A program made the translations under genes and the position numbers. Of a DNA stretch of 64,000 nt, positions 13,667 through 63,039 are shown in pieces. The DNA is from Mytilus edulis (taxonomy: Eukaryota): NCBI RefSeq assembly GCF_963676685.1, contig NC_092344.1:125116001-125180000 (forward strand). The letters run 5' to 3'. The notes under the pieces are model-generated. The model searched no databases. It was not told where the DNA came from and was given only the letters and a program-made list of their open reading frames with translations. Within the stretch, counting starts at the first letter, position 1. Every line of letters begins with the position of its first letter.

Positions 13667-13723
13667 ATGAGTACCATGGTAGATAATAGATGGGATCCTA
13701 TTCTTCAGAACCAACAAGGACCA
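13667..13723 (+). CDS. Probable first coding exon (exon 13659-13723): MSTMVDNRWDPILQNQQGP
   Basis: Acceptor tatttcag| at 13658, ATG at 13667 in aaaATG context, donor cca|GTAAGT in phase 0. Confidence 0.6.
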
Positions 13724-16700: not shown

Positions 16701-19700
16701 AGTGACAATGTGTCATACATATCACAAAGTGAAACATGACAGAAACTGAAAGGTGTTCTGATGTTATACATGTACATGTCACATAATTCACATGACAGAG
16801 TTTGAAATCAGTGGCACACATTCTACATGATGGCCAATGATATCAATACTGATACCACACCTTAAGTGTTACATGACAGAGTATTGATGTATGTGTCTCT
16901 GCTGACATGTCAGGGAATTTTTATGTGTCTCAGAGCTGATAATTTCAATGGTCAGACTTTTTTGTCTCAGATTTTAGATTCTTGATGTCAGGAAATTTTG
17001 GTCTTACAAAAAACAGCCCCCAACTTTCAATGCAAAGATGAGGATAGTGTATATAAATACTACTGTTGTATGGCAGCTCAAAATGTTAAAAGAAAGGTTC
17101 TTGTTGAAAACTATTTAATTTTAGATAAACCCTTAATAGTATGAACAGCAATGTAAGCATATAATTATGTTATTTTGAGGTTGTTATGTTTTTTGTAGAT
17201 TACATCTGGCTATGTTAGTAACAGTGATATCAGACAGAGAGAAAGAAAAGATCAAATTAAATGGGAAAGACAAAGAGAGTATGAAGACCTGATGAATAAG
17301 GTAAAATATTTACACAATTATCATAGGATCTCCTATTTTATAAGTGATGGGTACAATTTGTGGCACTTGAAAGTTATAACCCACATTTATATATTTAAAA
17401 GTTTTGAAATAAGCAATGATTTTTTTTAGATTTCAATTTGATAAAATTTCCTTTTAGTCTGATAAATACTTTTTTTGTTAATAATTTTTCTATAAAATCA
17501 AATTTAATTTTCATTTAGCCAGGGGAACCAGAGCAAGGCCAACAACAACAGGTATACAGTCACCATACTTCTGTTTGTCTCTCTGTCTCACAAGTGTTTT
17601 ATTTTTAACTTAATTACTTTGTAGCAAATCTAATCTTTAAAAGTTGATGAATTCTCAAATTTTGATTATTTCTTACTGATTTTTCACTAGAAAAACTCAA
17701 ACTTTTTTCTTTTGACAGCCCTATGCACTTGAGAGTTCTAATTGATATTTTATAAATAATAATTCAAGTTTTGGTTATGATACATGACTTTCTAATTATT
17801 TAACATTTTACATGATTTGGTGGAATTCTTATAGATGTATATTGTAATATTATTTAAACATTAATATATATTGTATTCAGTATTGTCATGTAGATGTTTA
17901 TTGGTTGTTGGTTGTCTGGTTCATCATTTTATATTATAATTGTCGACTACTTGAGCTGCTTGCTTTCAGAAATGAAGAGGCTCTTTCTCTAATATTGTTT
18001 AACAGAAAGTCTGTTCAGATACAATCTTGACAGAAAAAATATTTGAAAAGCTTAAAAATTTAACTATTTTGAGTGGAGAAATATTAAATCACACTTGAAG
18101 CATGATATATAGAATCTATCCACTTACTGACCAATTTCATGGTTTGTTATTATTAAGCAGGACAGGGAAATGTGTCATCCAGTAAACCAAACACATCTGC
18201 ATGTAACTAATGGTAACGGATCATGTGACAATATAATAACAAAGCACTAAAATGGGATGAATTTTTATTCATAGCACAAGTTCAAAATTTCAAAAATATG
18301 TAATTAAAACTCACTTCATTGATTGAATCAGCCCATAATATGATTAACAAGGAGTTAACTGTGTTGTAGTAAAAAATACAATTAATTCACCTACATGTTT
18401 TATTTTATTGATACCTTGTTTTAAATCTGTTTATTACAATTTATTTTATAATACCTAGGTAACATTGATAGATTGTTCCACTTTTCTACTTTTCAATAGA
18501 TGCTAAAATCCTATCTTAAGATTTTCTAATTAAGACAGTTGATATTGTGTCAAAATTTAAAAGTACATTAAAAACTTAATTCTTTGTCATATCTCCCAGA
18601 CTTAGCTTCTTGAAGCATACGACTACAAATTAATAGCAGCATCCATGCTTTAATCAGATACAAAGTTGAAGTCTAAGTAGTTTAAAGAATCTTCGTTGAA
18701 GCATTGAGATAGAATCTGTAGCAGATCAGGATGACGTTTTACATTTAATTGTTTTTAGCCAAACCCACCAGTATATTATAAAACTGGAGGAGCCGGAAAT
18801 AGCTTACCATTAGGGAGTTACGAGGAATCCCGTAAGACTTTAGACGATCAGCGCCAACAAGAGTACAATCGATTTGTAACCCAGGTATCACTGCTAGATG
18901 GCGCCATTCGTCAACCTTTTAGTAGACGCTAACATCTTATATTTATTTGCAGCAGTTTATTTAATGAACACTTTACATATTACATTTTTGACACACTTAT
19001 TTATATTTATATAATATTTGCACCATAATATTTCTCTTTTTTCAGTGAGTTCCTGCACAATACCTGTTTTATTTATATCCATGCAACATGTGTGTTTACC
19101 TTATTCTAAACCCATGCAGCATGTTTGTTTAACCTATTCATTATTAACATGTCTTTGGTTCTTTACTACAGTGAGTTCTCGGCTTTATTTCCAACTGCAT
19201 ATTATGATGAGGATGGCTTCAGTTTCTTGATATACTGCTGCTTAAGAAAGTTTGAGATACATTTACTGTTGTGAACTTGTCCATAAACAATTATTAATCT
19301 GCGTTCAATAAAAGAACAATGCTTAAACTGATGACTCTGCATTCCTAAGACCCTTTCAGAAAGTCTCAAAAAGCTAATGACAAACTGGCATTTTACACTT
19401 TGCAATTTAATTTATACATTTTAAATTAAATCTTTGAATTCTTGAATATTAACTGCTTCTTTGTTGGATATCTTGTTTATGAAACACGGAGATGTGGGGT
19501 ATATAAGACATTTTAGAAGTGAATAGAATTGGTACCAACATCATTTATATGTGACTTTATGTGTGTTTGTCAGAAAGTTATACATTAGATGACACATGTA
19601 TTTTTCAATCTTAACACTTTGTATGTGTTTGTCAAGAGGACTGATTATTAAGTTAAAGTATTGATGCCCAAATATTACCCATTAATAAATCCTATCAAAA

Positions 19701-22700
19701 GTGAAGTTGTTATTTGAATGTCACTGAATTCCATTTGGGTCTGTTTTTGTTCTGAGGTAATTCAATGAAGTCAAAAAGCTTGCTTTTAATTATACGTTAT
19801 TCATTGCAGCCTTTCATATATTTTTTATTACTGAATTCGTATTAGATTATTTGGGTATACTTCATTTAACCTCATTACTAATATTGATTGACATGTATAC
19901 AGGTGTATTTAAAACTTATATTTTCTATTTTGAATACTATGTTGGAGACCAATGAATGTGAATGGGTTCAGATAGGTTTTCATTGTTGACAGATTTAATT
20001 GCTTAAATAAAAGGCGGAATTTGTGTTCAACCGCATGTGTTCAGTTATGTCAGGTTTTACAGTGTAATTCGGGTATATTCCAGAAAAGGTTTGACTGTAC
20101 TTTCATTCATGAATTCTAATGCTAAGTATAATTTTCACCTGATAAGATTTATTTTCCTTCTATTTATTTTTGATAAGATTTCTCTGTAAACAATGTCTTT
20201 TGTTATGGGTTTAAGGTTTATTTAGTGAAGAAAATAGCAATTAAAAGGCATAAGATTAATCAGTGAACCAGAGCAATCAATTTGTTGACAAACTATATAA
20301 ATGTATTGAGTTCCGTCCTTTTGTCTCATTTAAAATAAAAAACAATACACCCGTATTTGTTGACGATTAAGGTTTGTTTGTTATTTATTGATAGCTACAC
20401 ATTGTGTTTATTGTTTTACATGTTTAGAAGTTTAAAGGATAATCTCAAAGGGCTATTATCATAATGATTTAGTATACACAATAGCCTGCTTTATTTGGCT
20501 TGTTTAATGCTTTTAAAGCTTATTCAAAATAACAAATATTTTTTTTAGGGTATAATTTGTAAGCTTTGATTTAAAAATAAATCTAGTTCCATTTTCATTT
20601 TTTTTACATTACAATTGAATGACTTTGAGATGTTCCTTAATTAGACACTGCAGTAAGGACCCGTGGTGACATTGAAAGTAATTGTTTGTAGCTAGAGGGT
20701 TTTGTTTTTGCAGTATATGTGATTTGGCTGTATGTTTTAGTGAAATGTGTTGGTACAGCTAAGTTTATCTCATCTTATCTGACACAAAAATAAGTGTCCT
20801 TGATTTATAGGTTTATATTACTTGTCAGATAAGTAAAGACTGGCTAAAAAGGTCTTATCTGGTGGTTAAGTATAAGTATTTTTTTTTACATTTAGGGATT
20901 CATTCATTAGAGTGTGTATAGGTGTATTTTTTAGTGTCTCTGTACTATAGAACTGGACCAACAAAACATGTTAATAGACCATTCTTAACAGTTATTTTAT
21001 TGTTCTTGAGAATTTGGTTTTAATGTCATTAACTTTGATAGTTTCTGTTAAATTCATTCACAATATATACATATACCTGTGAAGATTTAGAATTCGTGAC
21101 ATATAATTTAGACACCTATCTTTTGCTGAAGAATGTAGGTTGTCCTGAGTTGACTATTGTTTATTTTTGTTGTTTGGTTACTGTGACTATTTTATTCATT
21201 GGGCAAAGAAAGATAACTCTTGTTAAACTACCAAGGAAAGTAACTCTTCTGAATATAACAGTGTGATGCTAGTTTATCATATGCATTGTACTTATAGCAT
21301 TCATTAAATGTTTTATAGAAAAAAGACACAGAAAACAAAAGGAGAGAAGAATTGTACAGAAACTCTCAACAGAATTATAGACCTCCGCCTGAACCAGAAA
21401 TGTATGATCACGGTCAGATAGCAAAAGACCTCAGAGAAGAACGACAAAAGGAATATAATGATTATCTCGTAAGTTTTCTTACTTATTCACAATGTCACTT
21501 AGAATAAGTGGAATGATTTGTTGGGATAAGGAAAATATAAACACAATTGTTTCTGAGAAGACAAGATGGTTAAACATCTATTTTTCCTTATTTTATTTGT
21601 AACAGTTAAATTATTTTTTTATAAAATGTTACAAATGTGGTTAATATAAGTAAAATTTTAATACATATTTAGATATGAAATAGAGTTGTACCTGATCTAA
21701 AATGAATACATAAAGAAAAGTTGGTTTATTATTTTGTGCCTGTTATTTTTAGTACAGATATTTTAGTAGAAAAGTCTTTCAAGCAATCATGGGAAACATT
21801 GAAGGCAGCATTTCTAAACTGCTCTTCATCAATTTATTAAGCATTAAATATAAAGTGTTTGAAATTTTAGAATACCATAATAAGACAATAATAATACATC
21901 AGTTAAATTAATAATTAATAAAATTCTGAACAAATTTAATTAATATCAATAACAATTGACTGGAAAATTATATATCAACATTCTGAAACGCTATAAAAAC
22001 CATAGGAAAAGCTAAAGGGTGAAAATCAGAAAATAACAGTTGGGATGACATATTGAGTAAAGGGAATTCATATGTTATGTGCATGCAGTAGAATAGCATA
22101 TAAAGCTAGACAGCTGATTCAGCCTAATGTGCTTATTTATAGTGCAAGTATTTTTTTTACATTTAAACTTTTTCATTTAAAATACTTGTTAATATATTTT
22201 CTTTCATTCAACAAATTTAGTTTTCATGTTGATTTTAGTCACAGCATATTTGCTTGTATTTTCTTAGTGGTTCTATGATAACAAGATTTGCATTCTTCTA
22301 AAAATCTAGTATTGAAGGGGGAATATGAATTAAAAAGAGGAGATTTGAGGGTTTGCTGCTCTGATACAGCAATCAAACAATATACATTTGAAACATATTA
22401 AAGTACACCACAGAAATAGAATAGAAAGGCAGAAATTTGCTATGTATAAGATGTTGACCTGGAAAGAAGTTGTAATTGAGTTTAAATGACATAATCTGAA
22501 ATAAGGGAGATAATTTTAAATTTTTACAGAAAAACAAAGGTAACTTGCATGTGTCAGTCATGTTCTGTATGATGCTGCATGCATTCTGTCTGTTATCAAG
22601 TCTTAACAAAAGTTGACATATAATCACATCATAAATATACACATTTTCACATGAATGTTGCATGGTCACTCTGCAATAATTGAAATAGAATTTGAGTATT

Positions 22701-25700
22701 TAGGTATTAAGATAAACTTGTCATTCATAAAGGAAAAAAATATGAAGATTTTTTGTTATTTTTGATAAGTTCATGATATGGTATAAATTGATGTTTTCCT
22801 ACATTATTTAAAAGGAACCTCCCAGCAAGGGATTTACACACCATGAAGATAGAAAGAAAATGCTTTCTCAAGAGCGAAATAATGAATATAATGAATTTCT
22901 TGAGAAGAAGGTATAGACAAATGGTGTATTTTGACATGTGATGGTTTATTTGTTTCACTTTTTGGTATTGCACATTGTAGCATAAGTATGACTTGGTGAG
23001 AGTTATTCCAAGTTTTATTTAGTTATTGTAGCTGATGTAATTCAATGTTTGTAGACAGGTTGATATAAAAGTCATAACAATTATGTTGATGGGTAATCAA
23101 GAGGTACAGGGTTCTTTTTCATTGACAGTTAAGAAGGATTATTAACTTACCCAAAATAATCAACCTAGAAAATAAAGGCAGATTGTAGGGTTTTTAATGT
23201 GTATTCTTTTAGATGTTGTAAACAGCATTTTTTGTCTACAGGCATACTATGATTTGCATTTAAATTTTGTTACGCCTGTGGTATACCCTGTTGTGTAATA
23301 TAAATAATGACACATATTTTAACAAACATGTTTTGATATGAATTTGAACAAAAATATGAACATAGAACATAAGACATATCTCAATGCTCACTATTGTTTT
23401 TCACACCCAGATATAAAGCTCTCAACTACACACAAAATAATAAACAAATAGTCCTTTTATTTCAGCTGCACCATGTTATACACATCATGCTTTCAGTTTA
23501 AGTTTTTAGATTGTGTTAGACAAATATGCTTTAGTTAAAGTTGCAGATTGATATAGCGTTAAACAAGTTTTGCTACAGTTGTAGTTGTAGCTTGTGATTA
23601 AGGCAAACACATTTGGCATGATTTTGTGTTATAATCCTAGATCATTACATTTTGTGTTTTGGCTTCTGCTTCAAGTCATGTTTCAAACTTGGCATTATTT
23701 TAAGTTACAGTTGCTGCATGAAGTCATGTTTTAGTTTCAGCTTGTTGTCATTTATCACCATGTTTAAGCTGCAGCTTGTCATGTTTAAGCAGTTTGTATT
23801 TGTGTTTTTGAGTAGTATGGTGTAATGTATTAGATGCAAACTGTTTTCATTTTTTAGCTTCAGCTTATTGTCATTTGTCACCATGTTTTAGCCGCAGTTT
23901 GTCATGTTTAATCTTCAGTTTCTTGTCATGTTTTGACTGCAACATGCCATGTTTTAGCCACAGCTTGTCATGTATAGCAGCAGTTTGTTGACATGTTTTG
24001 ACTGCAACATGCCATGTTTTAGCCACAGCTTGTCATGTTTTAGCCGCAGCTTGTTATGTTTAAGCAGCAGTTTGTTGACATGTTTTTGTGAAGTATAATG
24101 GCATGTTTTGGATGCAAATGGTTGTCATGTTAAAGCTGTGGCTTGTTGCCATATTTTAGATTCAGCTTGCTATGTTTTAGATTCAGCTTGGTGTCATATT
24201 TCTGTTCCAGCTTGTAAATTATTGATTCAGTTTGTCCTCATATTTCAGCTTCAGTGTGTTCTAATGTTTTATCTGCAGCTTGTTGTTATGTTTTTTTGTC
24301 CAGGTTGTTTGTCATGTTTAAGCTGCAGCTTTGTTATTGTTTAAGGCAGCATGTTGTCATGATTAATGTACAAGTTGTTGTCATGTTTTGAACATCATCT
24401 TGTCTTATTAAGCTATAGCTTGTCATATTTCAGATGCAGCATGTGCCGGGTTTTATCATGCTGCTTGTTGTCATGTTTTATCTTCAGCTTGTTGTCATGA
24501 TTTATCTTTAGTTTGTTCTCATGTTTTATCTACAGCTTATTTTCATGTTTTAGCTTGAGCTTGTCATGTTTTTGCTGCAGCTTGTTTTCCTGTTTTATCT
24601 GCACCTTTGTTGTCATGTTTTAGCTGCCACTTTTCATATTATAAGCTACAGATGTGGTCATTATTATCATGCAGCTTGTCTTATTTTAGGAGCATCTTTT
24701 TAATGTTTTAAGCTGTATCATGTTAGCAAAATTTAGGTACAAGTTTTGATTGCAGTTTGTCGTCCTTTTAAGATGTAGCTAGTTGTAATTTTTTCCCTGT
24801 AGCTTGTTCTCATGTTTCAATTGTCATATTTAAGTGACAGCTTGTTGTCATGCTTATGCTGCAACTTGTAGTCATGTTGTTATCATATTTTAATTTCTGG
24901 TTGTTGTTATTTTTAGCTGCAATTTAAAGTGATGTTTTAGATGCAACTTTTATTTACGTTTTAGCTGCAGCTTGTTGCCATGTTTTAGCTTAAGCATATT
25001 GTCATGTTTAAGTCATAGCTTATGATGTTAAAGTTAGAGCTTGTTATGTTTATGTCAGAGCTTGTCATGTTTAAGTCGGGCTTATCATGTTTAAGTCAGA
25101 GCTTGTTAAGTTTAAGCTAAAGGATTTTGTCATGTTTTAATTGCAGCTTAATGTTCTGTTAAAGTTGTGGCTTTGGTAATGTTTTGTTTTATCTGCAGCT
25201 TGTTTCCATGTGTTAGCTGAAGTTTAGTGTCATGTTAAAGCTACAAGTAGTTGTCATGTTTAGAACAGTCTGTCAAGTTTTAGTCAGTCTGAGTGTCATG
25301 TTTGTCATATCTTAGCTGTTGATTTCATGTGTAAGAATTAGTTTGTCATTTTCAGGTTCATTTAAAAATAAGAAGATGCTGTGTGATTGCCAATGAGAAA
25401 AATCTCCACCAAAGACCAAATGACATAGAAGTTTACAACTATATGTCACCATAGGGCTTCAGCAATGTGCTTGTTTCATGTTTTACTTGCAGCTTGTTGT
25501 CACATTTCAGCAGCAACTTTTTGACAGTTTAAGTTTCAGCTTGTTGTTCTTATTAAACTGCAGCGTGTCAGGTTTTAGCTGCAACTTGACAGGTTTTTAT
25601 ACATTCATGTTGAAGACCATGCTTGGCGTTTTTTAAGCTGCAGCCTGCAGTTTCTTTGTTATGTTTTTTCAGCATGTTTTTCTGATGTAACTGCAGCTTG

Positions 25701-55700: not shown

Positions 55701-58700
55701 AACATATATCTACCATTTTTTTTTACATGGAACATTTTACCATAACGTTGCATGTAAAAACGTGTGTTGTTTAGCGCGGTGAATAACACTTTCTCAGGTA
55801 AATATGCTTTTGTATTCAAAATCCAATTCATATAGAGAAACCTACTAAAATAATACCAATATGGAATAAGTCTAAATATTCTTCAAATTCAAAGAGTTCT
55901 TTAAAAAGTTAAGAAATAATGCTTTGGGAGAATTTTCCATTTCTGATTTCCATGTCTGCTGAAGTTGGTCAAAAATTATCTGTAGAATGCTCAACTTAAA
56001 CCATTTTGGATTAAAACTAAAGTTGCTCTGATTTAACCAAATATTTGAAAGTCCATATTTATTCAAGATATTTTTTATACATATCAACCATTCAAAATTT
56101 TAAGAGTACTAACTGATCTTCAAGTTAGTATTACACAGCTAAAACAATGTTGTATTATGGTCAGGTGATCAAAAGTTATGGTTGTTTTAGCAGTCAGTAA
56201 ATAGGTGTAAAAATTCATTTTAAATTTAGTAATTACTGGTAATAACTGGGCCGTTTAAGGAATTACTTGTATTAACTAAGTGCATCGGGAATTACCTGTA
56301 ATTCCTAAATTTTAGTAATTACATGTAATTCCTAATTTCACCTATTTACTGTAACATATATATGTGTAATTAATTGATCTTTTAATTCTAACTAATATGA
56401 TCTACACTCAAATGCACTTTTTAACATTATGATTTAAGAGCATATTAAAAATCCATGTTACAATTGTTAACTGATGCTATGATATAAAGAATTGTTGAAG
56501 TTTTTTCCTATTTAAGTACTAAGAAATGAGAATTTATAAGGTGAAAAATTCTTTTTTAAACTTTTGCATAATTAAGTATTGAACATAATTTAATTGGAAA
56601 AACTAACTAAGAAGCATTATTGTTATTTTACGATGCCACAATGTCAGTGTATGTTGAATGTGCTTTCATCTGAATGAAACTATCTCGGTACCCAAGTCAG
56701 GTAAGATAGTATATCATTTTCTGATACCCAAGTTATGTTATGACTTGATACTAATGTATGATTGCTCTTTATAACCACAGAAGACACCTGAACAGGGAAG
56801 GAGGGAATGGATAGATACGTCAGGCCCTAAAGGAATTATTGCTGGGGTCGATTCATATAACTATGATAAACGTAAAAACTTTGCTGAGGAACGGAAAAAA
56901 GAATATAAAGATATTATGGAAAAGGTACCAGTGTGCTTTGTATGCTAGGCTCTACTTTGTTATCTGGTTCCCTTTAGATTATATAACATGTCTGTTGCGT
57001 TATATGTTGTTTTGAATATACATGGCTTCAATACTTAATGAAAGTTACTCTATTTGCTTAGATAGATTATTTCAGTGCAATTTATGAGAGAGAATTTCTG
57101 TAAAAGTTGTAATATAATAGAGAATCCAGTTTAAAGTTGACCTCACTGAAATTTTCTGAAAACTTTCAGTGTGGTATATTAGAGATTTAGCTAAGCTAGT
57201 TTATACAGAACATTACTTTTGACATATAAAAGCTACTTGAAGAAAGTCCATGTATATTTACTGTTGTCATATAATATTTTCTACTCTCTAATAATTAATT
57301 AATTACCTTGTATGGTTTAGTTTAATTTAATAAAACATTTCTAAAACTGGATACCAAGTTTCATGTGGTAACTGGAACAACATTTTTGTTTAACCCTTTC
57401 ACCGATTGCTGCCCAGACAGAAGCTACTCTGAGACGATGGCTTCCCTGGCTACTTTTACTCAAGTGGGAGATCTTAATAATAAATGTCAATAAAAACTTG
57501 TTTGTAGTTATTTGTTTATTTATTTCATTCACTAACACCAAGTTCACAGGTTTTTTTATGTTTTGATAATTTTTTCCTCATAAAATATTCAAATTTTCAA
57601 TTTTTCGGCATTATTTCAGTGAAATTCTCAAAATTCTGCTTATTGACCCCAAATCGTAATTTTTTTAACCCAAAATGGCAAAATTTTGAAAAAAAATTAT
57701 GAGGCTGTACAAATTCCTCACACTGAACGATGTCCATTCCAAGTGTTTTGAACATAAAACGACATTTTATGTCAAAAAAGTATACTAGTTTGGCCTCAAT
57801 TCTTCCATATTCTTTCTAAAAAATTGTTCCCTCATTTCAAATTCTCGTAAATTCCGTAAATTTCCTCTGATTTTGACACGGTTTTCAACAAACTGAAGCG
57901 TCATGTTTACACTTTCATCCGGGTTATTCATCAAAGAAAGATAACTCATGTTTGCACTGTTTGAGCCGGAAATATAAAAGATGTATTCCGATCCCGGTAA
58001 AACGGGACTCGTCGTCAGCAGTCTGAAGCGTGAATCCCGGTAAACCGGGACTCATCGGCGAAAGGGTTAAGTTATATAAAATGTACTGCAGATTTTTGAA
58101 ATTATGCATAGGCATTTGTATCTTGTCTTAAAATTGAAAGGATTTTTTTTCAGAAATACCTCTATAGGGATAGAAAGACACTGATATTATATCAAATTTG
58201 ATAGGTGTTGCTTAGTTTTGAAAACAAAAGAAAGTAACAAACTTTTGATTTTCTTATTTCTTGAACAGTCCATATACAAAAAAGTAATTTGCAAAATGTC
58301 AAGAATCTGTTGAACAGGCTACATGCAAACTTGGTAATGATGAAATAGTAACAAACTCTTATCTTGCATGAAAAGTGATAGCCTTTATTAGTTATTAATA
58401 ATGTATGATATGGAAAAGGAATATGTACAGAATAATATTATTGTAGGGTAAATGTATACTGAGTTGTTTTAAGACTAAGGCCAAGGGTTTAACAGTGTCT
58501 GTTTTTAGACTAAGGCCAAGGGTTTAACAGTGTCTGTTTTTAGACTAAGGCCAAGGGTTTAACAGTTTCTGTTTTTAGACTATAAGGCCAAGGGTTTAAC
58601 ATTGTCTGGTGTTGGTTAATTATGCCCCACCTACGATAGTAAAGGGGCAATATGTTTTCTGGTCTGTGGGTCCGTTTGTTCGTACGTTTGTTTGTTCGTT

Positions 58701-61700
58701 CGTCCCGCTTCAGGTTAAAGTTTTTGGTCAAGGTAGTTTTTGATGAAGTTGAAGTCCAATCAACTTGAAACTTAGTACACATGTTCCCTATGATATGATC
58801 TTTCTAACTTTAATGCCAAATTAGAGTTTTTCTCCCAAATTCACAGACAACTGAATATGGAAAATGATAGTGCGAGTGAGGCATCCGTGTACTTTGGACA
58901 CATTCTTGTTTTTGAATTGTTATCTTATTTTTACCCTTATTCTGGGTTTAAGTATATATATCCTCTTTTATTCTATGAGTCTTTTTTTAGCTCACCTGGC
59001 CTAAAAGGCCATGTGAGCTTTTCTCATCACTTGGCGTCCGTTGTCGTCGTCGTCGACGTCGTCGTCGTCGTCGTCGTCGTTAACAATTTTTCAAACATCT
59101 TCTCCTCTGAAACTACTGAATGGATTTGAATGAAACTTAACATGATTGTTCCTTAGTATATCCTGCACAAAATGTGCGCTTCGATTTTTGATCCGTCAAA
59201 AAACATGGCCGCCGTTACTTAAAATAGAACATAGGGGTCAAATGCAGTTTTTGGCTTATATCTCAAAAACGAAAGCATTTAGAGCAAATCTGACATGGAG
59301 TAAAAATGTTCATTAGGTCAAGATCTATCAGCCCTGAAATTTTCAGATGAATCAAACAAACCATTGTTGGGTTGCTGCTACTTAATTGGTAATTTTAAGG
59401 AAATTTTGCAGTTTTTGGTCATTATCTTGAATATTATTATAGATAAAGATAAACTGTAAACAGCAAAAAAGATCAGCAAAGTAAGATCTACAAATAAGTT
59501 AATATGACCAAAATTGTCAATTGACCCCTTAAGGGGTTATTGTCCTTTAATGACAATTTTTCACAATTTGTTCATCATATTTGCTAACTTTAAAAAATCT
59601 TCTCCTCTGAAACTACTGAATGGATTTGGTTAAAACTTAGCATGATTGTTCCTTAGATTATCCTGCTCAAAGTGTGTGCTTTGATTTTTGATCCGTCAAA
59701 AAACATGGCCGCCGTTACTTAAAATAGAACATAGGGGTCAAATGCAGTTTTTGGCTTATATCTCAAAAACGAAAGCATCTAGAGCAAATCTGACATGGAG
59801 TAAAAATGTTCATTAGGTCAAGATCTATCAGCCCTGAAATTTTCAGATGAATCAAACAAACCATTGTTGGGTTGCTGCCACTTAATTGGTAATTTTAAGG
59901 AAATTTTGCAGTTTTTGGTCATTATCTTGAATATTATTATAGATAAAGATAAACTGTAAACAGCAAAAAAGATCAGCAAAGTAAGATCTACAAATAAGTT
60001 AATTTGACCAAAATTGTCAATTGACCCCTTAAGGGGTTATTGTCCTTTAATGACAATTTTTCACAATTTGTTCTTCATATTTGCTAACTTTAAAAAATCT
60101 TCTCCTCTGAAACTACTGAATGGATTTGGTTAAAACTTAGCATGGTTGTTCCTTAGATTATCCTGCACAAAGTGTGTGCTTTGATTTTTGATCCGTCAAA
60201 TAACATGGCCGCCGTTACTTAAAATAGAACATAGGGGTCAAATGCAGTTTTTGGCTTATATCTCAAAAACGAAAGCATTAAGAGCAAATCTGACATGGAG
60301 TAAAAATGTTCATTAGGTCAATATCTATCAGCCCTGAAATTTTCAGATGAATCAAACATCCAATTGTTGGGTTGCTGCCACTTAATTGGTAATTTTAAGG
60401 AAATTTTGCAGTTTTTGGTCATTATCTTGAATATTATTATAGATAAAGATAAACTGTAAACAGCAAATATGATCAGCAAAGTAAGATCTACAAATAAGTC
60501 AATTTGACCAAAATTGTCAATTGACCTCTTTAGGAGTTATTGCCCTTTAAAGACTTTTTTCACAATTTGTTCACCATGTTGACTTACTTTAAAAAATCTT
60601 CTCTTATGAAACTGCTGTATCAATTTCAGCCAAACTTAGGCTAAATGAGTTTCAGAGTTTCAGAGTATCTAGTATAAATTTTATATTTCATTTCCTTGTA
60701 TGTCAAGAAACATAGCTCCTATGGCTAAAATAGAACATAGGAGAAAATGATTTTTTTTTGCTTTTGAAGAAAATAGGACGATTCAAAGAACATTTAAATA
60801 AATTGAAAAGCCAAAATAATCATTGATGAGAGATTAAACCAAAAAAATTCAGGTGAGCGATTCAGGCTCTTGAGAGCCTCTTGTTTAAATTCAAGATAAT
60901 GTTATTAATTTAACTTAAGCCTTTTTGGTATTGGCCTTTTTTAATTTTTTGATTTAACAGATTTTAACTGTTAATTATATAATCATTATAGGTAATTTTA
61001 TGAGTTTTTGCCAAAGTTTGAATGTATAGTAAAGAATTCTATTGTAAATACCTATCGTTTTGGTTCCTTTTCTGATTTGCATATTGTAGTTGATTAACAT
61101 TTTTAAATTAATTTAATCAACTATAAAAAGAAAGCAGGTGTTTCTTCCACCAAAGTAGAGGTTGAGGAACCAGTTCAAGAAGAGGAGGTTTGTTATTTTG
61201 ATATTGTCAGTTTGTGGAGGTTATTTAAGATTATTTTTAAAACAAACAATATACCCATTCATAGAAGATATTGTAATAATTAGTTTGCCTTTTCATTTTC
61301 AAATGTTGATAATGTACCTACCTAAAGTTTTCTTGGTGGATCAGATTAAATAAAAAGATGCGATAAGACATTATTGAAGAACACTTCAGACTCATTGATT
61401 GTCACTTTAATCTACAAGTGTGTACAATAATTAGTGTAAAGATTGCATTCAATCCCTAATGGAACTTCTTTGATTTGTATGGGATTTTCCTGAAATAATC
61501 AATACTTTTTGGAAACACATTAATGTAGTGCATTGAGATGAACATCTTATACATCCTAAAAATATTTTATGGAAATATATACTCAGATACTCAAGTTACA
61601 AAATAAAGTGTATGTATAGAACCAACTTCTTCATGTTTTACAAATGGCATTTGAATGTACATTTTTGTGTAATATTAAAATTGGGTAATCTTCTTTTGTC

Positions 61701-63039
61701 CGTAATTGTAGTTGAGCCAACTTCACTTCTAGACAAGAGGAGATATACCTAAATTGAATATTGCCTTCCATTTATCAAACATTGCAATGTTTAATTTCGG
61801 TTTCCATTGCAAAATGAATGCAATCTTTACCCACAGTGCTCTCAAGCACTTTGATTTTATCAGAATGTTTGTATGTTGTAATTACTGAAATACATGCATG
61901 TTAAAAATTATTATTCAGATTTTGTATTAACATTTTTCATATAAGTATCAGTTTTGAAAGTAAAAGAAAATACATCAATTGTAAGAAAAGCAATGAAAAA
62001 AGGGAAATAAATCGCAGGGATCATGAATATGGTTAAAAAAAAATTCTTTTTGTTGCTTTTAATTGGTTCTTTTACATATAAAATTGATACTTGACTACTA
62101 ATTGTTGCATGTAGCCAGCTTTAGAACGGAAACCTACCACACCTATTAACCTTAATGCTGTGAAGATTTTCCCCGTCGGATCAGGTTATACCAGAAGACA
62201 GCGCGAATTACAAGCAGAAAGAAAGAAAAATTTTAAAGACTTTGCTGAAAAGGTTTGTCTGAAAACCAGAAAGAAGATAGATTTAGTGTGTAATGTCGAC
62301 ATTGTCATGTTCCTGTTATGTTATAATGGTATTGTTAGTGTAGTGTTATTTTATGTTATTTTATGTTATTGTTATACTTTGTATTTTATGAGAATTTTGT
62401 TAACCTATGTAGCAGAGGTACATTGAGAATTACTTTATTTCTTACTTAATAATACCACCATTTCCATCTCTAAGTTTGACTATTGGAGATGGTAGACTCT
62501 ATTTACACCTCTGTGGATGAAAAGAAATCCTGAAAAACAATAAATGAAATGATTATAACAGTTAATAAGTATAATCCGATTCTCCCTGAGCATGATTCCT
62601 TCTTGACCACCATCCGGTTTTGGATTAGAATATTTGATTTGTTTCTACAAATCAAATATTACATGCAAATTTAGTGGAAATTAGCTAAGGGATAATTTTC
62701 CAAAAAGCAGAATTACTGATATTCAGTTTATAGAACTTTTTGGTTGATTCAGGATCCTTTAGCTTCGCTAATTTTGAAAATTTATTATGAAAGCTACACC
62801 AAATATATAAATAGATTTTGATTATTATAAAGACATAATTATGTTGTTTATAAAATTCTTTCTTTGTTTAGAAAAATGAAATCTATAAAAAGCAGCAAGA
62901 AAACCGAGAGAGTTTCCGTGAAAGTTTAGACCGTGATCTAATGGAGTCGCCACCTATAATTCCTATTGGAGAATATGACACAAAGAAACGTCAGTTCAAA
63001 CAAGAGGCCCACCAAGAAATGGTCAATTTCCTTGAACGG
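13667..63039 (+). CDS. Large multi-exon gene encoding a CSPP1-like helical-repeat protein (about 27 coding exons, about 1,130 aa in this window, 3' end beyond the window)
   Basis: A chain of AG/GT-bounded, stop-free exons, all phase 0 with coding lengths divisible by 3. Most end in an ER..EYN.FL.K motif. Similarity to CSPP1 repeats is recalled, not searched. Confidence 0.85.
13692..14059. repeat. 60-bp minisatellite (6 copies) duplicating the exon 3' end and donor
   Basis: Unit gggatatctattcttYagaaccaacaaggaccagtaagtataattgtatgaggtactcaa. Confidence 0.95.
14439..15010 (-). mobile_element. 3' end of a CR1/L2-group LINE (ORF2 C-terminus, 3'UTR and (ATT)n tail)
   Basis: Peptide LMHKCLKNEAPVYL...YKKSFIYSGSILWNNLP...FKK, followed by a structured 3' end, AATAAA and an (ATT)n tail. 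Confidence 0.8.
15797..16665. repeat. 41-bp minisatellite (aaatatgatacatgtcacttagtggcacatgacagtgtctt), interrupted at 16402-16612
   Basis: Tandem period of 41, with degenerate copies on both flanks. Confidence 0.92.
16402..16612. mobile_element. Small TIR element inserted in the 41-bp repeat
   Basis: Imperfect TIRs tgtcaacgtatatttgttcc and ggaacttatattccgtgaca, with ACAT on both sides. Confidence 0.55.
17199..17300 (+). CDS. Repeat exon: ITSGYVSNSDIRQRERKDQIKWERQREYEDLMNK
   Basis: tttgtag| ... aag|gtaaaa, 102 nt, phase 0-0. Confidence 0.85.
17519..17551 (+). CDS. Micro linker exon: PGEPEQGQQQQ
   Basis: ttttcatttag| ... cag|gtatac, 33 nt, a GC-richer island. Confidence 0.65.
18759..18884 (+). 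CDS. Repeat exon: PNPPVYYKTGGAGNSLPLGSYEESRKTLDDQRQQEYNRFVTQ
   Basis: gtttttag| ... cag|gtatca, 126 nt. Closest to the recalled CSPP1 SLPLG..YE motif. Confidence 0.9.
21319..21468 (+). CDS. Repeat exon: KKDTENKRREELYRNSQQNYRPPPEPEMYDHGQIAKDLREERQKEYNDYL
   Basis: ttttatag| ... ctc|gtaagt, 150 nt. Confidence 0.9.
23560..25710. repeat. Old, degenerate ~21-24-bp tandem repeat (tgtcatgttttagctgcagct-like)
   Basis: The motif recurs dozens of times with high divergence and a strong T/G strand bias. Confidence 0.8.
26399..27018. mobile_element. Non-autonomous element with a ~160-bp terminal hairpin and a short inverted repeat pair
   Basis: Hairpin 26399-26558. Inverted repeat attctgataggac (26560-26572) pairs with gtcatgttagaat (27006-27018). 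Confidence 0.7.
27453..27599 (+). CDS. Repeat exon: KQKISEEHSRIKHRHRYTPAGGLAIGQYDLQRKRLRDELSRDYKQSLLK
   Basis: ctttcctaacag| ... aag|gtaatt, 147 nt. Confidence 0.9.
27912..28046 (+). CDS. Linker exon: QRQDQLVFRAKEFQLDSAPEYLGNLTEERPLVGSPRLSYEIPKYQ
   Basis: cttttag| ... cag|gtattc, 135 nt, stop-free in phase 0. Confidence 0.75.
29786..29917 (+). CDS. Repeat exon: REQEIHTRRQMPPTPPGGLNIATEQERKRVEDIKKTMYRDELLK
   Basis: ttttacattag| ... aag|gttaat, 132 nt. Confidence 0.88.
29940..30150. repeat. ~32-bp minisatellite (ctaagttcataatgaacttgacctttagtatt), about 6 copies
   Basis: Tandem periodicity. The unit contains the palindrome aagttcat-a-atgaactt. Confidence 0.85.
30454..30627 (+). CDS. Pro/Arg-rich linker exon: QQKEQLYNRATQQGEVSVINRTSPTQAPPNQISPRGRPPPHPDSGRRRGPPPQNDRMQ
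   Basis: atttgtag| ... cag|gtgggt, 174 nt. Confidence 0.85.
30799..33433. repeat. 62-bp intronic satellite (about 34 copies), split by a MITE
   Basis: Unit tatccaagaatagagataacagggttatttcccttgtctgtacctaacttgatggtcagagg. Confidence 0.97.
32485..33003. mobile_element. 519-bp MITE with hAT-like termini and a 6-bp TSD
   Basis: TIRs catagatgccaacc and ggttggcatctatg. GAATAG duplicated at 32479-32484 and 33004-33009. Confidence 0.9.
33617..33742 (+). CDS. Linker exon: EKSRETPNYWNEGRQAPSPKSVESDSKNVKPLNVESETKTKQ
   Basis: taacag| ... cag|gtatac, 126 nt, stop-free in phase 0. Confidence 0.78.
35497..35616 (+). CDS. Repeat exon: PMESHRPQEGDLRTGFFDDRRASPLNRDERQQDYQQFLAN
   Basis: ttctacag| ... aat|gtaggt, 120 nt. 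Confidence 0.87.
35670..36727. mobile_element. hAT non-autonomous element
   Basis: TIRs tagtgttgtcaa and ttgacaacacta. 8-bp TSD CTTTAATA at 35662-35669 and 36728-36735. Subterminal AACCGGTT motifs. Confidence 0.92.
36806..37556. mobile_element. Possible decayed piggyBac-like MITE
   Basis: Imperfect inverted ends ttagctttaccctgctg and cagcatggtaagggttga. The TTAA sites are degenerate. Confidence 0.35.
37928..38092 (+). CDS. Repeat exon: KQREDEMKHQRLEDQRHAPHLDLSKGDYYDAETYERKRMSLNSERKNDYQNFLSK
   Basis: tttatag| ... aag|gttagt, 165 nt. Confidence 0.9.
40455..40565 (+). CDS. Repeat exon: QKENKMSQVKETEDFQTERHHVLAKERNREYNEFLEQ
   Basis: attcag| ... cag|gtttgt, 111 nt. Confidence 0.87.
41108..41386 (+). 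CDS. Long repeat exon: KRKMRPITRDMGG...SLSINEEAKAASKMSMKMERKREYNNYLKNQTTKK
   Basis: Pyrimidine tract plus taaatag| ... aag|gtatta, 279 nt. Confidence 0.88.
41629..41760 (+). CDS. Repeat exon: PQGLTKEKTPQGYGSLYFNEEYSERREKAQKHALNEEYNQYLTK
   Basis: aattag| ... aag|gtatat, 132 nt. Confidence 0.87.
42138..42254 (+). CDS. Repeat exon: EGLKQEKVEPLQLEEDYQTRRQKELAIERHQDFIDYLEK
   Basis: ttatag| ... aag|gtatta, 117 nt. Confidence 0.83.
42604..42780. repeat. 24-bp minisatellite (aatgttgattctgtcgtccatttt), about 7 copies
   Basis: Tandem periodicity. Confidence 0.92.
43590..43727 (+). CDS. Repeat exon: QNSGVTSQRNGPVVNVGLPLYQEKYDDHYNNLKQKRNNEYNELLEQ
   Basis: atttgtag| ... cag|gtaaaa, 138 nt. Confidence 0.9.
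44706..44744 (+). CDS. Micro linker exon: MSNRQNMKADKLF
   Basis: Strong tttttttcttcag| acceptor and ttt|gtatgt donor, 39 nt, phase 0-0. Confidence 0.55.
46352..46486 (+). CDS. Repeat exon: TSRPSYRQYTPESLQGLPIGQTRYDHQKKQQEVQRNREYNEHLAK
   Basis: tattttag| ... aag|gtagac, 135 nt. Confidence 0.9.
47078..47859. mobile_element. Non-autonomous element with a 13-bp inverted repeat pair, a ~108-bp terminal hairpin and an internal tRNA-like segment
   Basis: ttacatcccagct (47078-47090) pairs with agctgggatgtaa (47739-47751). Hairpin 47752-47859. Confidence 0.72.
48735..48836 (+). CDS. Divergent repeat or linker exon: KGEKIGMEDELLTRRDMTLKKYMEDQVRSEMHDK
   Basis: ctttatag| ... aag|gtaaac, 102 nt. Confidence 0.75.
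49432..49572 (+). CDS. Repeat exon: FRDFTKPSEKDVGPDKFGLPIGQFRYDDWRKHQVVERSKEYQDMQAQ
   Basis: atacag| ... cag|gtatct, 141 nt. Confidence 0.88.
51723..51860 (+). CDS. Repeat exon: QSSGHRAWVDMTSPVGALGGRDTYSDNNKKKFNNQRRKDYNEILAK
   Basis: CAG|CAG (NAGNAG) acceptor ... aag|gtattt, 138 nt. Confidence 0.88.
52321..52474 (+). pseudogene. Decayed or frameshifted repeat exon (QPKSNHEWKDSSGLKGVLATKDLYYEK / RKKINEERRQDYNRILS); may survive as a truncated exon 52321-52404
   Basis: Good acceptor ttctatgtag|. The repeat helix lies in a shifted frame after an A5 run, and no GT occurs at the expected end. An in-frame tac|gtaaaa donor is present at 52405. Confidence 0.65.
52538..53237 (+). repeat. Interspersed repeat (aaaattgagaaaggaaatgg...tgtcaaag family)
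   Basis: The first ~140 bp are homologous to 6238-6380. Confidence 0.65.
53679..53800. repeat. 45-bp tandem repeat, about 3 copies
   Basis: tatacatttataccttgagcgattagtatttatttatctacagtg. Confidence 0.8.
53811..54126. repeat. 24-26-bp minisatellite ttgttctgt(ta)ntgtgtaa
   Basis: Tandem periodicity. The repeat resumes at 56357 after an insertion. Confidence 0.9.
55099..55392 (+). mobile_element. Short Helentron-like (HINE/pearl-type) element
   Basis: atgccccac and gtggggcat inverted repeats, a (GTCC/GTTC)n microsatellite and a short 3' hairpin. A second copy lies at 58620-58910. Confidence 0.8.
55514..55869. mobile_element. Element with a ~146-bp terminal hairpin and a 12-bp inverted repeat pair
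   Basis: Hairpin 55514-55659. ttattccacatt (55661-55672) pairs with aatatggaataa (55858-55869). Confidence 0.68.
55872..56100 (-). mobile_element. LINE ORF2 fragment (RTEX-like)
   Basis: IKNILNKYGLSNIWLNQ...DQLQQTW...SPK is typical of the region downstream of the RT domain. Confidence 0.55.
56781..56924 (+). CDS. Repeat exon: KTPEQGRREWIDTSGPKGIIAGVDSYNYDKRKNFAEERKKEYKDIMEK
   Basis: ccacag| ... aag|gtacca, 144 nt. Confidence 0.9.
57394..58066. mobile_element. piggyBac-type MITE
   Basis: TTAA at 57390-57393 and 58067-58070. TIRs ccctttcaccgat and atcggcgaaaggg. Confidence 0.85.
58466..58608. repeat. 35-bp tandem repeat, about 4 copies
   Basis: gtttttagactaaggccaagggtttaacagtgtct. Confidence 0.88.
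58620..58910 (+). mobile_element. Second copy of the short HINE-like element
   Basis: Highly similar to 55099-55392. Confidence 0.82.
58986..60885 (+). mobile_element. Helentron-associated non-autonomous element with three or more internal ~500-bp tandem repeats
   Basis: gctcacctg and caggtgagc subterminal IRs, (GTC)n and 3' hairpin aggctcttgagagcct. The unit tctcctctgaaactactgaatgg occurs at about 59101, 59601 and 60102. Confidence 0.9.
61131..61187 (+). CDS. Possible short linker exon: KAGVSSTKVEVEEPVQEEE
   Basis: 57 nt, phase 0-0, gag|gtttgt donor. The AAG acceptor is weak. Confidence 0.5.
62115..62252 (+). CDS. Repeat exon: PALERKPTTPINLNAVKIFPVGSGYTRRQRELQAERKKNFKDFAEK
   Basis: catgtag| ... 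aag|gtttgt, 138 nt. Confidence 0.88.
62872..63039 (+). CDS. Repeat exon: KNEIYKKQQENRESFRESLDRDLMESPPIIPIGEYDTKKRQFKQEAHQEMVNFLER
   Basis: ttctttctttgtttag| ... cgg|gtataa, 168 nt. Confidence 0.9.

What the first reader, a model, noticed from the sequence alone, without database searches (positions are those of the whole stretch)
18759..63039. The repeat module resembles CSPP1 repeats, expanded roughly ten-fold
From memory, vertebrate CSPP1 has about two N-terminal motifs of the form [24 protein letters not shown] and SLPIGER...ERLKLERNKEYNQFL. Examples here are SLPLGSYEESRKTLDDQRQQEYNRFV (18759), GLAIGQYDLQRKRLRDELSRDYKQSL (27453), GLPIGQTRYDHQKKQQEVQRNREYNEHL (46352) and IIPIGEYDTKKRQFKQE (62872). 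The junction KKTMYRDELLK|QQKEQ also resembles the K..Y..EL..Q..E helices of CSPP1/CCDC66. Established: CSPP1 is a centrosomal and ciliary microtubule-stabilising protein. Inference: this is either a CSPP1 with a greatly extended N-terminus or an undescribed paralogue made of the repeat, possibly a periodic microtubule-lattice binder in cilia or sperm. The predicted N-terminus (MSTMVDNRWD) does not match the CSPP1 start as I recall it.
Basis: partly seen in the sequence, partly recalled or inferred. Interest (0 to 1): 0.8.

Follow-up and report, generated by a model that had tools for sequence, protein, structure and literature searches.

The report
Repeat-only CSPP1 paralogue in mussel
A blue-mussel gene, labelled "trichohyalin-like" by automatic annotation, is really an old bivalve copy of the front half of the cilium/centrosome gene CSPP1, in which the short helical motif found twice in fish CSPP1 occurs 24 times, one per exon, and is mixed by alternative splicing.

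Summary
On the + strand, 21 intact exons in the window and 3 more just downstream each encode one ~45-residue module. Each module is a loose linker, often a GLPIG-type turn, then a 24-residue helix ending ..ER..EYN.FL.K at a phase-0 GT donor. One further copy is decayed. Nothing similar lies on the − strand.

The CSPP1 reading holds in both directions:
- A profile built only from window modules recovers true CSPP1 proteins (gar, Nematostella, Priapulus, molluscs) out of 1.84 billion proteins.
- A profile built only from non-mollusc CSPP1 motifs recovers 18 window exons.

The gene is not CSPP1 itself. It ends 12 kb past the window and has no CSPP1_C or CCDC66 domain. The canonical Mytilus edulis CSPP1 lies 9.8 Mb upstream on the same chromosome. 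The two genes share a first exon, the one-module-per-exon layout and a TPSYEEILDxKRREEAxYRR motif, after which the window gene stops. This points to an ancient duplication of the 5' half of CSPP1.

I found orthologues only in bivalves, with up to 50 predicted isoforms. Spliced transcript contigs confirm exon skipping. The function, probably multivalent microtubule binding, is inferred and not shown.

A sibling note in this scan (s1-832271) flags the same stretch of this window.

The parts
13667..13723 (+). Exon 1 with the start codon (MSTMVDNRWDPILQNQQGP). It is homologous to the first exon of M. edulis CSPP1 (MTSMMESDIDQFIQNQK...).
   Evidence: Exact match to residues 1-19 of P0001; comparison with the CSPP1 locus.
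17199..17300 (+). Module exon 1 (..RQREYEDLMNK|gt), constitutive in the isoforms seen.
17519..17551 (+). 11-codon linker micro-exon (PGEPEQGQQQQ), cassette.
18759..18884 (+). Module exon 2 (SLPLGSYEESRKTLDDQRQQEYNRFVTQ), cassette.
   Evidence: best hit of the non-mollusc CSPP1 motif profile, E 3.6e-9.
21319..21468 (+). Module exon 3 (..REERQKEYNDYL|gt).
22815..22910 (+). Module exon 4 (..SQERNNEYNEFLEKK), cassette.
27453..27599 (+). Module exon 5 (GGLAIGQYDLQRKRLRDELSRDYKQSLLK), cassette.
27912..28046 (+). Non-module cassette exon (QRQDQLVFRAKEF...EIPKYQ).
   Evidence: Present in 7 of 15 RefSeq isoforms; splice sites checked.
29786..29917 (+).
30454..30627 (+). Pro/Arg-rich linker exon (QQKEQLYNRATQQ...), constitutive.
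   Evidence: predicted disordered.
33617..33742 (+). Non-module cassette exon (..TPNYWNEGRQAPSPKS..), conserved in other Mytilus species (and, by eye, in the scallop and Mya orthologues).
35497..35616 (+). Module exon (..RDERQQDYQQFLAN|gt).
37928..38092 (+). Module exon (..NSERKNDYQNFLSK|gt).
   Evidence: transcript contigs join it to 40455 (loose ends).
39066..39182 (+). Module exon with a strong GLPIGQYRY motif. The frame and splice sites are intact, but it is in none of the 15 isoforms examined, so its use is unproven.
40455..40565 (+). Module exon (..AKERNREYNEFLEQ|gt), cassette.
   Evidence: contig depth 48-173 and joins to 38092 and 46352.
41108..41386 (+). Long exon ending in a module (..KMERKREYNNYLKNQTTKK), cassette.
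   Evidence: GT..AG joint 41386|41629 in contigs of 3 runs.
41629..41760 (+). Module exon (..HALNEEYNQYLTK|gt), cassette.
   Evidence: joint 41760|42138 in contigs of 3 runs.
42138..42254 (+). Module exon (..AIERHQDFIDYLEK|gt), cassette.
43590..43727 (+). Module exon (VGLPLYQEKYDDHYNNLKQKRNNEYNELLEQ), a rarely used cassette.
   Evidence: 93% identical in a M. coruscus model.
44706..44744 (+). 13-codon cassette micro-exon (MSNRQNMKADKLF).
46352..46486 (+). Module exon (GLPIGQTRYDHQKKQQEVQRNREYNEHLAK).
   Evidence: AlphaFold2 of this module gives residues 1-20 as coil and 21-44 as helix, with block-mean pLDDT of 81-97 over the helix.
48735..48836 (+). Weak, divergent module exon (KGEKIGMEDELLTRRDMTLKKYMEDQVRSEMHDK).
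   Evidence: E 0.0013.
49432..49572 (+). Module exon (GLPIGQFRYDDWRKHQVVERSKEYQDMQAQ). Not in the 15 isoforms seen, but conserved in M. coruscus.
51723..51860 (+). Module exon (..NNQRRKDYNEILAK|gt). Not in the 15 isoforms seen, but conserved in M. coruscus.
52321..52517 (+). Decayed module copy, a paralogue of 51723 and 56781. There is a frameshift between the linker and the helix, and no GT donor after ..DYNRILS.
56781..56924 (+). Module exon (..AEERKKEYKDIMEK|gt), constitutive.
61131..61187 (+). Acidic linker exon (KAGVSSTKVEVEEPVQEEE).
62115..62252 (+). Module exon (IFPVGSGYTRRQRELQAERKKNFKDFAEK), constitutive.
62872..63039 (+). Module exon (IIPIGEYDTKKRQFKQEAHQEMVNFLER), the last one in the window. 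The gene continues with 3 more modules and the tail up to about 12.4 kb beyond the window end.

Best explanation
Shown: the window holds most of a ~63-kb Mytilus edulis gene (RefSeq 'trichohyalin-like', e.g. XP_071151322.1). This gene is a bivalve paralogue of CSPP1 made from the 5' half of that gene. It keeps a CSPP1-like first exon and amplifies the CSPP1 N-terminal motif to 24 intact modules, one per symmetric phase-0 exon. It keeps the mollusc-CSPP1 motif TPSYEEILDxKRREEAxYRR and stops about 25 residues after it. It therefore lacks the CSPP1 regions that lie downstream of that motif: the mapped microtubule-binding helix region, the pausing/CCDC66-like region and the C-terminal domain that binds CEP104 and targets centrosomes. 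Because every module exon is phase 0/0, exons can be skipped freely. RefSeq models up to 50 isoforms, and transcript contigs show both inclusion and skipping.

Predicted: each module is a ~20-residue flexible linker followed by a 24-residue amphipathic, highly charged helix. The whole protein is predicted as helices on a flexible string with no globular domain.

Inferred, about 0.35-0.4 likely: like the CSPP-L-specific N-terminal region of CSPP1, which adds to microtubule affinity, the modules each make a weak contact with the tubulin lattice. The array would then act as a multivalent, length-adjustable microtubule stabiliser or spacer in cilia or flagella, without CSPP1's growth-pausing and tip-complex functions. 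My confidence in the identity as a CSPP1-derived paralogue is about 0.9. The confidence figure below covers identity and function together.
For: - Module array and strand specificity.
- Exon phases and splice sites.
- The window-only profile A1 against 1.84e9 proteins gave 99 hits. All 26 of the 30 looked-up hits that carry a source name are mollusc repeat proteins or CSPP1. They include gar W5MAN2 (E 4e-5), Nematostella CSPP1 (5e-5), Priapulus CSPP1-like (7e-9) and mollusc proteins carrying PF24578.
- The reciprocal profile, built from five gar, Nematostella and Priapulus motifs, hits 18 + strand exons at E<0.02, 3 downstream exons and none on the - strand.
- P0001 has no Pfam domain. PF24578 is found only at C1:115.31 Mb and on contig C935. 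PF15236 is found only at C1:98.03 Mb.
- The canonical CSPP1 locus has the same module-per-exon phase-0 layout and a similar exon 1.
- The shared tail motif lies 17-36 residues from the C-terminus in the paralogues and 850-1040 residues from it in full-length mollusc CSPP1.
- The protein is colinear with oyster, scallop and Mya orthologues at 24-33% identity, E down to 3e-66, but matches Mya CSPP1 only at E 5e-8.
- All 98 full-length homologues are bivalve proteins, with isoform numbers up to X50.
- Exon-inclusion matrix. Spliced joints 41386|41629 and 41760|42138, and joins 38092>40455 and 40565>46352, in contigs of 3 runs.
- AlphaFold2: the module is a helix. The whole protein has 20 helical segments and disordered linkers, pTM 0.21.
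Against: - No experiment shows that the N-terminal CSPP1 motif binds microtubules on its own. The mapped minimal binding domain is a different helix (human residues 375-453), and the module profile does not match that helix (iE 2-5).
- No structure of CSPP1 exists to show a binding mode.
- The expressing tissue is unknown. The one raw RNA-seq run laid had no reads on these exons, and the runs with spliced contigs are only guessed to be RNA.
- Three strong-motif exons (39066, 49432, 51723) are in none of the 15 isoforms examined.
- Isoform counts come from automatic RefSeq models.
Confidence: 0.55

Rival explanations
1. The modules are a docking array for some non-tubulin partner of the CSPP1 N-terminus, or a decoy that competes with CSPP1 for that partner. 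The protein would then be a scaffold or regulator rather than a lattice binder.
For: The function of the CSPP1 N-terminal motifs has never been assayed alone. The module profile does not match the mapped microtubule-binding helix. Conserved charged and aromatic positions on one helix face would suit any partner.
Against: No partner is known. Loss of the N-terminal region in CSPP-S weakens the effect on microtubules in a purified system, which points to tubulin itself.
Confidence: 0.3
2. This is CSPP1 itself with a greatly extended N-terminus.
For: It has the same motif, a similar first exon and a shared tail motif.
Against: The RefSeq products end about 12 kb beyond the window. No CSPP1_C or CCDC66 domain was found on this gene's product or anywhere else on the chromosome apart from the 115.3 Mb and 98.0 Mb loci. 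A complete CSPP1 with about 11 modules and CSPP1_C sits at C1:115.25-115.31 Mb. The bivalve orthologues all end at the same place.
Confidence: 0.02
3. The likeness to CSPP1 is only shared composition (Glu/Arg/Lys/Gln-rich helices), as the label 'trichohyalin-like' implies.
For: The protein is highly charged. RefSeq names it by composition. Language-model look-alikes all score below 0.9.
Against: There are position-specific matches (GLPxG cap, ER..EYN.FL) in both directions, with whole-library E-values. Hits are confined to CSPP1 and these paralogues among all the looked-up hits that carry a name. The first exon, tail motif and exon phase structure are shared. There is no S100/EF-hand domain.
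Confidence: 0.03
4. It is a functionless leftover of a partial gene duplication.
For: One decayed module copy exists, and three exons are absent from the isoforms examined.
Against: Orthologues are colinear in mussels, oysters, scallops, Mya and venerid clams, with invariant residues inside modules. The frames are intact over 28 exons. Spliced transcripts exist.
Confidence: 0.02

Closest known systems
CSPP1 (centrosome and spindle pole-associated protein 1), including the M. edulis copy at C1:115.25-115.31 Mb
   Same: Both have the N-terminal module (hydrophobic-Pro-hydrophobic-Gly turn plus helix ..ER..EYN.FL.K). There are 2 copies in gar, 1 in Nematostella, 3 in Priapulus and 5-11 in molluscs. 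Mussel CSPP1 also has one module per phase-0 exon, a similar first exon, and the mollusc motif TPSYEEILDxKRREEAxYRR.
   Different: The window gene has 24 modules. It has no CSPP1_C domain (PF24578), no CCDC66-like or pausing region and no significant match to the mapped microtubule-binding helix. It ends right after the shared tail motif. It forms its own bivalve-only orthologue group with dozens of splice forms.
CCDC66
   Same: Both are charged helical ciliary-type proteins. True CSPP1 of Nematostella also carries the CCDC66 Pfam domain.
   Different: No PF15236 match was found on any exon or on the RefSeq product. The only genomic PF15236 hit is 27 Mb away.
Trichohyalin (the RefSeq label)
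   Same: Both are very rich in Glu, Arg, Lys and Gln and are predicted helical.
   Different: It has no S100/EF-hand head domain and no Pfam hit at all. The name reflects composition only.
Repeat-built microtubule inner or lattice proteins (MAP6/SAXO Mn-motif proteins, tau/MAP2 repeats)
   Same: The concept is shared: many short modules on a flexible chain, each thought to touch one lattice site.
   Different: No sequence relationship was detected (Pfam and PDB searches were blank). Binding is untested here.

Membership tests
CSPP1 family (broad sense: homologue) | N-terminal GLPxG-turn plus helix motif ending ..ER..EYN.FL | tested here: met
   The window-module profile finds gar, Nematostella, Priapulus and mollusc CSPP1. 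The reciprocal profile from non-mollusc CSPP1 finds 18 window exons and 3 downstream exons, and none on the - strand.
CSPP1 (orthologue, full architecture) | C-terminal domain CSPP1_C (Pfam PF24578) | tested here: not met
   PF24578 is absent from P0001 and from the Mya, Ostrea and Argopecten orthologues, and present in the CSPP1 controls. In the genome it occurs only at C1:115308635 and on contig C935.
CSPP1 (orthologue, full architecture) | Central microtubule-binding helix (human residues 375-453) and the pausing/CCDC66-like region | tested here: not met
   There is no PF15236 match. The protein ends about 25 residues after the tail motif, which in CSPP1 precedes these regions. The resemblance of exon 29786|30454 to that helix is not significant, so a diverged remnant cannot be fully excluded.
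CSPP1 (mollusc lineage features) | First exon M-x-x-(A/M)-(M/V)-(D/E)...QNQ, and the motif TP(S/T)YEE(I/M)L(D/E)xKRREEAxYRR | tested here: met
   Exon 1 was compared with the M. edulis CSPP1 locus. The tail motif is found in Haliotis, Batillaria, Biomphalaria, Pinctada and Mya CSPP1 and in most of the retrieved bivalve paralogues (mussels, oysters).
CCDC66 | CCDC66 domain (Pfam PF15236) | tested here: not met
Trichohyalin / S100 fused-type proteins | N-terminal S100 EF-hand domain | tested here: not met
   No Pfam family at E<=0.01 on P0001 or its orthologues.
Microtubule inner or lattice-binding proteins (functional class) | Direct binding to microtubules, or presence in axoneme preparations | not testable with these tools
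   There is only indirect support from work on the human CSPP-L and CSPP-S isoforms (PMC9948759).

The most novel reading that the evidence does not exclude
The CSPP1 N-terminal module would be an autonomous tubulin-lattice (possibly luminal) binding unit of about one tubulin length. Bivalves would have turned it into a combinatorially spliced 'ruler' of up to 24 units, about 100-200 nm long, that sets or stabilises particular stretches of ciliary or flagellar microtubules. That would also reveal what the untested N-terminus of the human ciliopathy protein CSPP1 does.
Probability: 0.2. Interest if true: 0.75.

Novelty: new variant of a known kind. Interest (0 to 1): 0.5.

Why it matters
CSPP1 is a Joubert-syndrome ciliopathy protein that stabilises microtubules from the lumen, yet the role of its N-terminal motifs has never been tested on their own. 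Bivalves carry a natural construct that consists almost only of that motif. It is repeated 24 times, conserved across the sampled pteriomorph and heterodont bivalve lineages, and spliced into many length variants. This gives three things:
- a sequence definition of a module that Pfam does not model;
- a corrected identity for a whole set of "trichohyalin-like" gene models in mussels, oysters, scallops and clams;
- an experimentally convenient way to ask what the motif binds.

It is also a clean example of exon-by-exon repeat growth, with symmetric phase-0 exons that allow free exon skipping.

Tried and rejected
- Pfam on ten single exons, and on the RefSeq product and its orthologues, gave no family.
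- The module profile against all PDB sequences gave only chance hits (E>0.6). Gar CSPP1 against the PDB gave nothing, so no structural template exists.
- I tested whether the mapped CSPP1 microtubule-binding helix is itself a diverged module. By eye, GGLNVG...AEYRRELQ in Mya CSPP1 resembles GGLNIA...TMYRDELLK here. The profile score there is negative (iE 2.4-4.8), so I dropped this as unsupported.
- I looked for a CSPP1 C-terminal part downstream of the window. None exists within 60 kb or anywhere on the chromosome other than at the canonical locus.
- Gastropod "trichohyalin" proteins (Patella, Pomacea) might have been orthologues. They keep the CSPP1-type N-terminal helix, and the Lottia relative is named as a CCDC66-domain protein. 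They look like CSPP1 itself or short forms of it, and I did not count them.
- ESM Atlas look-alikes included a mollusc CSPP1_C cluster, CFAP141 and RIB43A. All scored below 0.9, so they carry no weight.
- The raw RNA-seq run X24 had no reads on the exons.
- Paper searches by gene identifiers and by CSPP1 plus mollusc found nothing on this gene.
- The long ORFs at 10.9-13.2 kb on both strands are an artefact of a 24-bp minisatellite.
Full report
**Source and rules.** The window is Mytilus edulis chromosome-scale contig C1, bases 125,116,001-125,180,000, + strand. The species comes from the RefSeq protein that maps exactly to the window, on a contig of the same length, 126,317,657 bases. The sequence is 31% G+C and contains no N. 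I searched the exons one at a time and did not build or search a joined gene model of my own. All full-length comparisons used public proteins that the search tools returned.

**Observation.** Translating the + strand shows the quoted peptides at the stated places.
- An HMM of the modules finds 21 intact module exons and one decayed copy in the window, plus three more 1.1, 2.8 and 4.4 kb past its end. The best − strand hit is E 0.28.
- Each module exon starts after AG and ends at a GT donor directly after the last helix residue (usually ...EYN.FL.K|gt). Each is a multiple of three in length and phase 0/0.
- The consensus, anchored at the donor, is Y....K.L..ER..EY.DFL.K. Module exons are 32-93 codons long (median 46) and total 1,104 codons.
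- The copies are old. The closest pairs are 61-69% identical in DNA, and their flanking introns show no similarity.
- Local sub-families exist: {39066, 46352, 49432} and {51723, decayed 52321, 56781}.

**The gene.** A profile of 22 window modules (A1) was scored against 1.84 billion proteins. The top hit (E 3e-141, 18 stretches) is XP_071151322.1, "trichohyalin-like isoform X24 [Mytilus edulis]".
- That protein maps at 100% identity onto 28 exons from 13667 to about 12.1 kb beyond the window.
- Across 15 M. edulis isoforms (numbered X24-X50), about 15 exons are cassettes and the rest are constitutive.
- Three strong-motif exons (39066, 49432, 51723) are in none of those 15 isoforms. However, 43590, 49432 and 51723 are 91-93% conserved in a M. 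coruscus model.

**Transcripts.** Contigs of three public runs (guessed to be RNA) carry the GT..AG joints 41386|41629 and 41760|42138. Their loose ends join 38092 to 40455 and 40565 to 46352. So both inclusion and skipping of the 41108-43727 block occur. One true raw RNA-seq run showed no reads on these exons. The expressing tissue remains unknown.

**Is the module the CSPP1 motif?** Yes, by two independent tests.
- Forward test. Among the 99 significant hits of the window-only profile, every one of the 26 looked-up hits that carries a source name (30 were looked up) is either a mollusc repeat protein or a CSPP1. These include spotted gar CSPP1 (two stretches...[31 protein letters not shown] and ...GLSLPIGERRSAKDRLRSERNKEYNQFL), Nematostella CSPP1, Priapulus CSPP1-like, and Haliotis, Mya, Batillaria, Biomphalaria, Nucella, Sinanodonta and Pinctada proteins. 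Most of these carry or are named for the Pfam domain CSPP1_C.
- Reverse test. A profile built only from the five motifs of gar, Nematostella and Priapulus hits 18 + strand window segments at E<0.02 and the three downstream exons. It hits nothing on the − strand.
- Significant module counts are 2 (gar), 1 (Nematostella), 3 (Priapulus), 5-11 (mollusc CSPP1) and 9-18 (bivalve paralogue isoforms). The window gene has 24 in the genome.

**Is the gene CSPP1?** No.
- Its product and its Mya, Ostrea and Argopecten counterparts have no Pfam domain, whereas the CSPP1 controls score 63-96 bits for CSPP1_C.
- In this genome CSPP1_C occurs only at C1:115,308,635 and on a small contig. The CCDC66 domain occurs only at C1:98.03 Mb.
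- The 115.25-115.31 Mb locus is a complete CSPP1. Its exon 1 reads MTSMMESDIDQFIQNQKAKL. It has about 11 modules, mostly one per exon with the donor in the same phase-0 place, then ...SPSYDDVLDRKRQEEARYRR..., then the helical middle and the C-terminal domain.

**Origin.** The window gene shares three things with that locus: the first exon (MSTMVDNRWDPILQNQQ versus MTSMMESDIDQFIQNQK), the exon/module layout, and the motif TPSYEEILDSKRREEASYRRFEDPEYSR.
- In mussel and oyster paralogues this motif lies 17-36 residues from the C-terminus. In full-length mollusc CSPP1 proteins 850-1040 residues follow it.
- The simplest history is a duplication of the 5' half of CSPP1, broken just after that exon, followed by further exon duplication.
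- The paralogue is colinear with oyster (E 3e-66), scallop (3e-48) and Mya (4e-26) proteins, but matches Mya CSPP1 only at 5e-8.
- All 98 full-length homologues found are bivalve proteins: Mytilus species, Crassostrea/Magallana, Saccostrea, Ostrea, Mizuhopecten, Mercenaria and Ruditapes. Isoform numbers reach X50. Two oyster fragments are auto-named CSPP1 in UniProt.
- Gastropod "trichohyalin" proteins keep the CSPP1 N-terminal helix, and their Lottia relative is named as a CCDC66-domain protein. I take them for CSPP1 forms, not orthologues.

**Structure.** AlphaFold2 on the module alignment gives residues 1-20 as coil and 21-44 as a confident helix that starts right after GLPIG. On the 1,097-residue isoform, with 16 orthologues in the alignment, it gives 20 helical segments separated by low-confidence linkers. 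Most helices fall in 10-residue blocks of mean pLDDT about 70-88. pTM is 0.21, with no globular domain. Conserved positions (Y, L, Y, F/L with K, E-R, E, K) fall on one helix face. This follows from the consensus and is inference.

**Mechanism.** Published work maps the minimal lumen-binding domain of human CSPP1 to residues 375-453 and a pausing domain to 706-796. [quoted passage not shown] CEP104 and ARMC9 bind the C-terminal part (PMC6702141; PMC12170345).
- The window protein keeps only the N-terminal kind of element, multiplied.
- I therefore infer, at about 0.35-0.4, a multivalent, length-variable microtubule-associated protein without the pausing or tip-complex functions.
- The main rival, at about 0.3, is a docking or decoy array for another partner.

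**Novelty.** I found no paper on this gene. Pfam has no model of the module. The gene is already annotated, though under a misleading name, and UniProt has automatically linked oyster fragments to CSPP1. I class it as a new variant of a known kind, with moderate interest. A sibling first-reader note on the same stretch (s1-832271) describes the phase-0 exon array, and my tests agree with it.

Noticed in passing
window 13698-14058: A 60-bp minisatellite (6 copies, 95% matches) lies directly after exon 1. It repeats the end of that exon (..NQQGP) together with its GT donor, so several in-frame look-alike donor sites follow the real one.
   Followed up: partly
window 52321-52517: A decayed copy of the 51723/56781 module type. 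The linker part is in one frame and the helix part (KIRKKINEERRQDYNRILS) in another, and there is no GT donor.
   Followed up: yes
window 10912-13233: A 24-bp minisatellite of about 96 copies creates long open frames on both strands (up to 316 codons). These have no Pfam match and are not genes.
   Followed up: yes
window 39966-40287: An intronic segment with enormous depth in all four runs laid (up to 35,000 summed contig depth, and the only place the raw RNA-seq run hits). It is probably a very high-copy transcribed mobile element or SINE.
   Followed up: no
window 30798-32484 and 33004-33433: Two arrays of the same 62-bp tandem repeat (27 and 7 copies, 97-99% matches) lie in the intron between the linker exon 30454-30627 and the cassette exon 33617-33742.
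   Followed up: no
window 59089-60617: A 500-bp unit is repeated 3.1 times (95% matches) in the intron before exon 61131.
   Followed up: no
G000:C1:115251000-115309000 (L012-L017): The canonical M. edulis CSPP1 has about 11 N-terminal modules, far more than the 2 in gar. The expansion of the motif therefore began in mollusc CSPP1 itself, before or apart from the paralogue.
   Followed up: partly
G000:C935:30738-30842: A second CSPP1_C match lies on a small unplaced contig. It is probably an alternative haplotype of the CSPP1 3' end.
   Followed up: no
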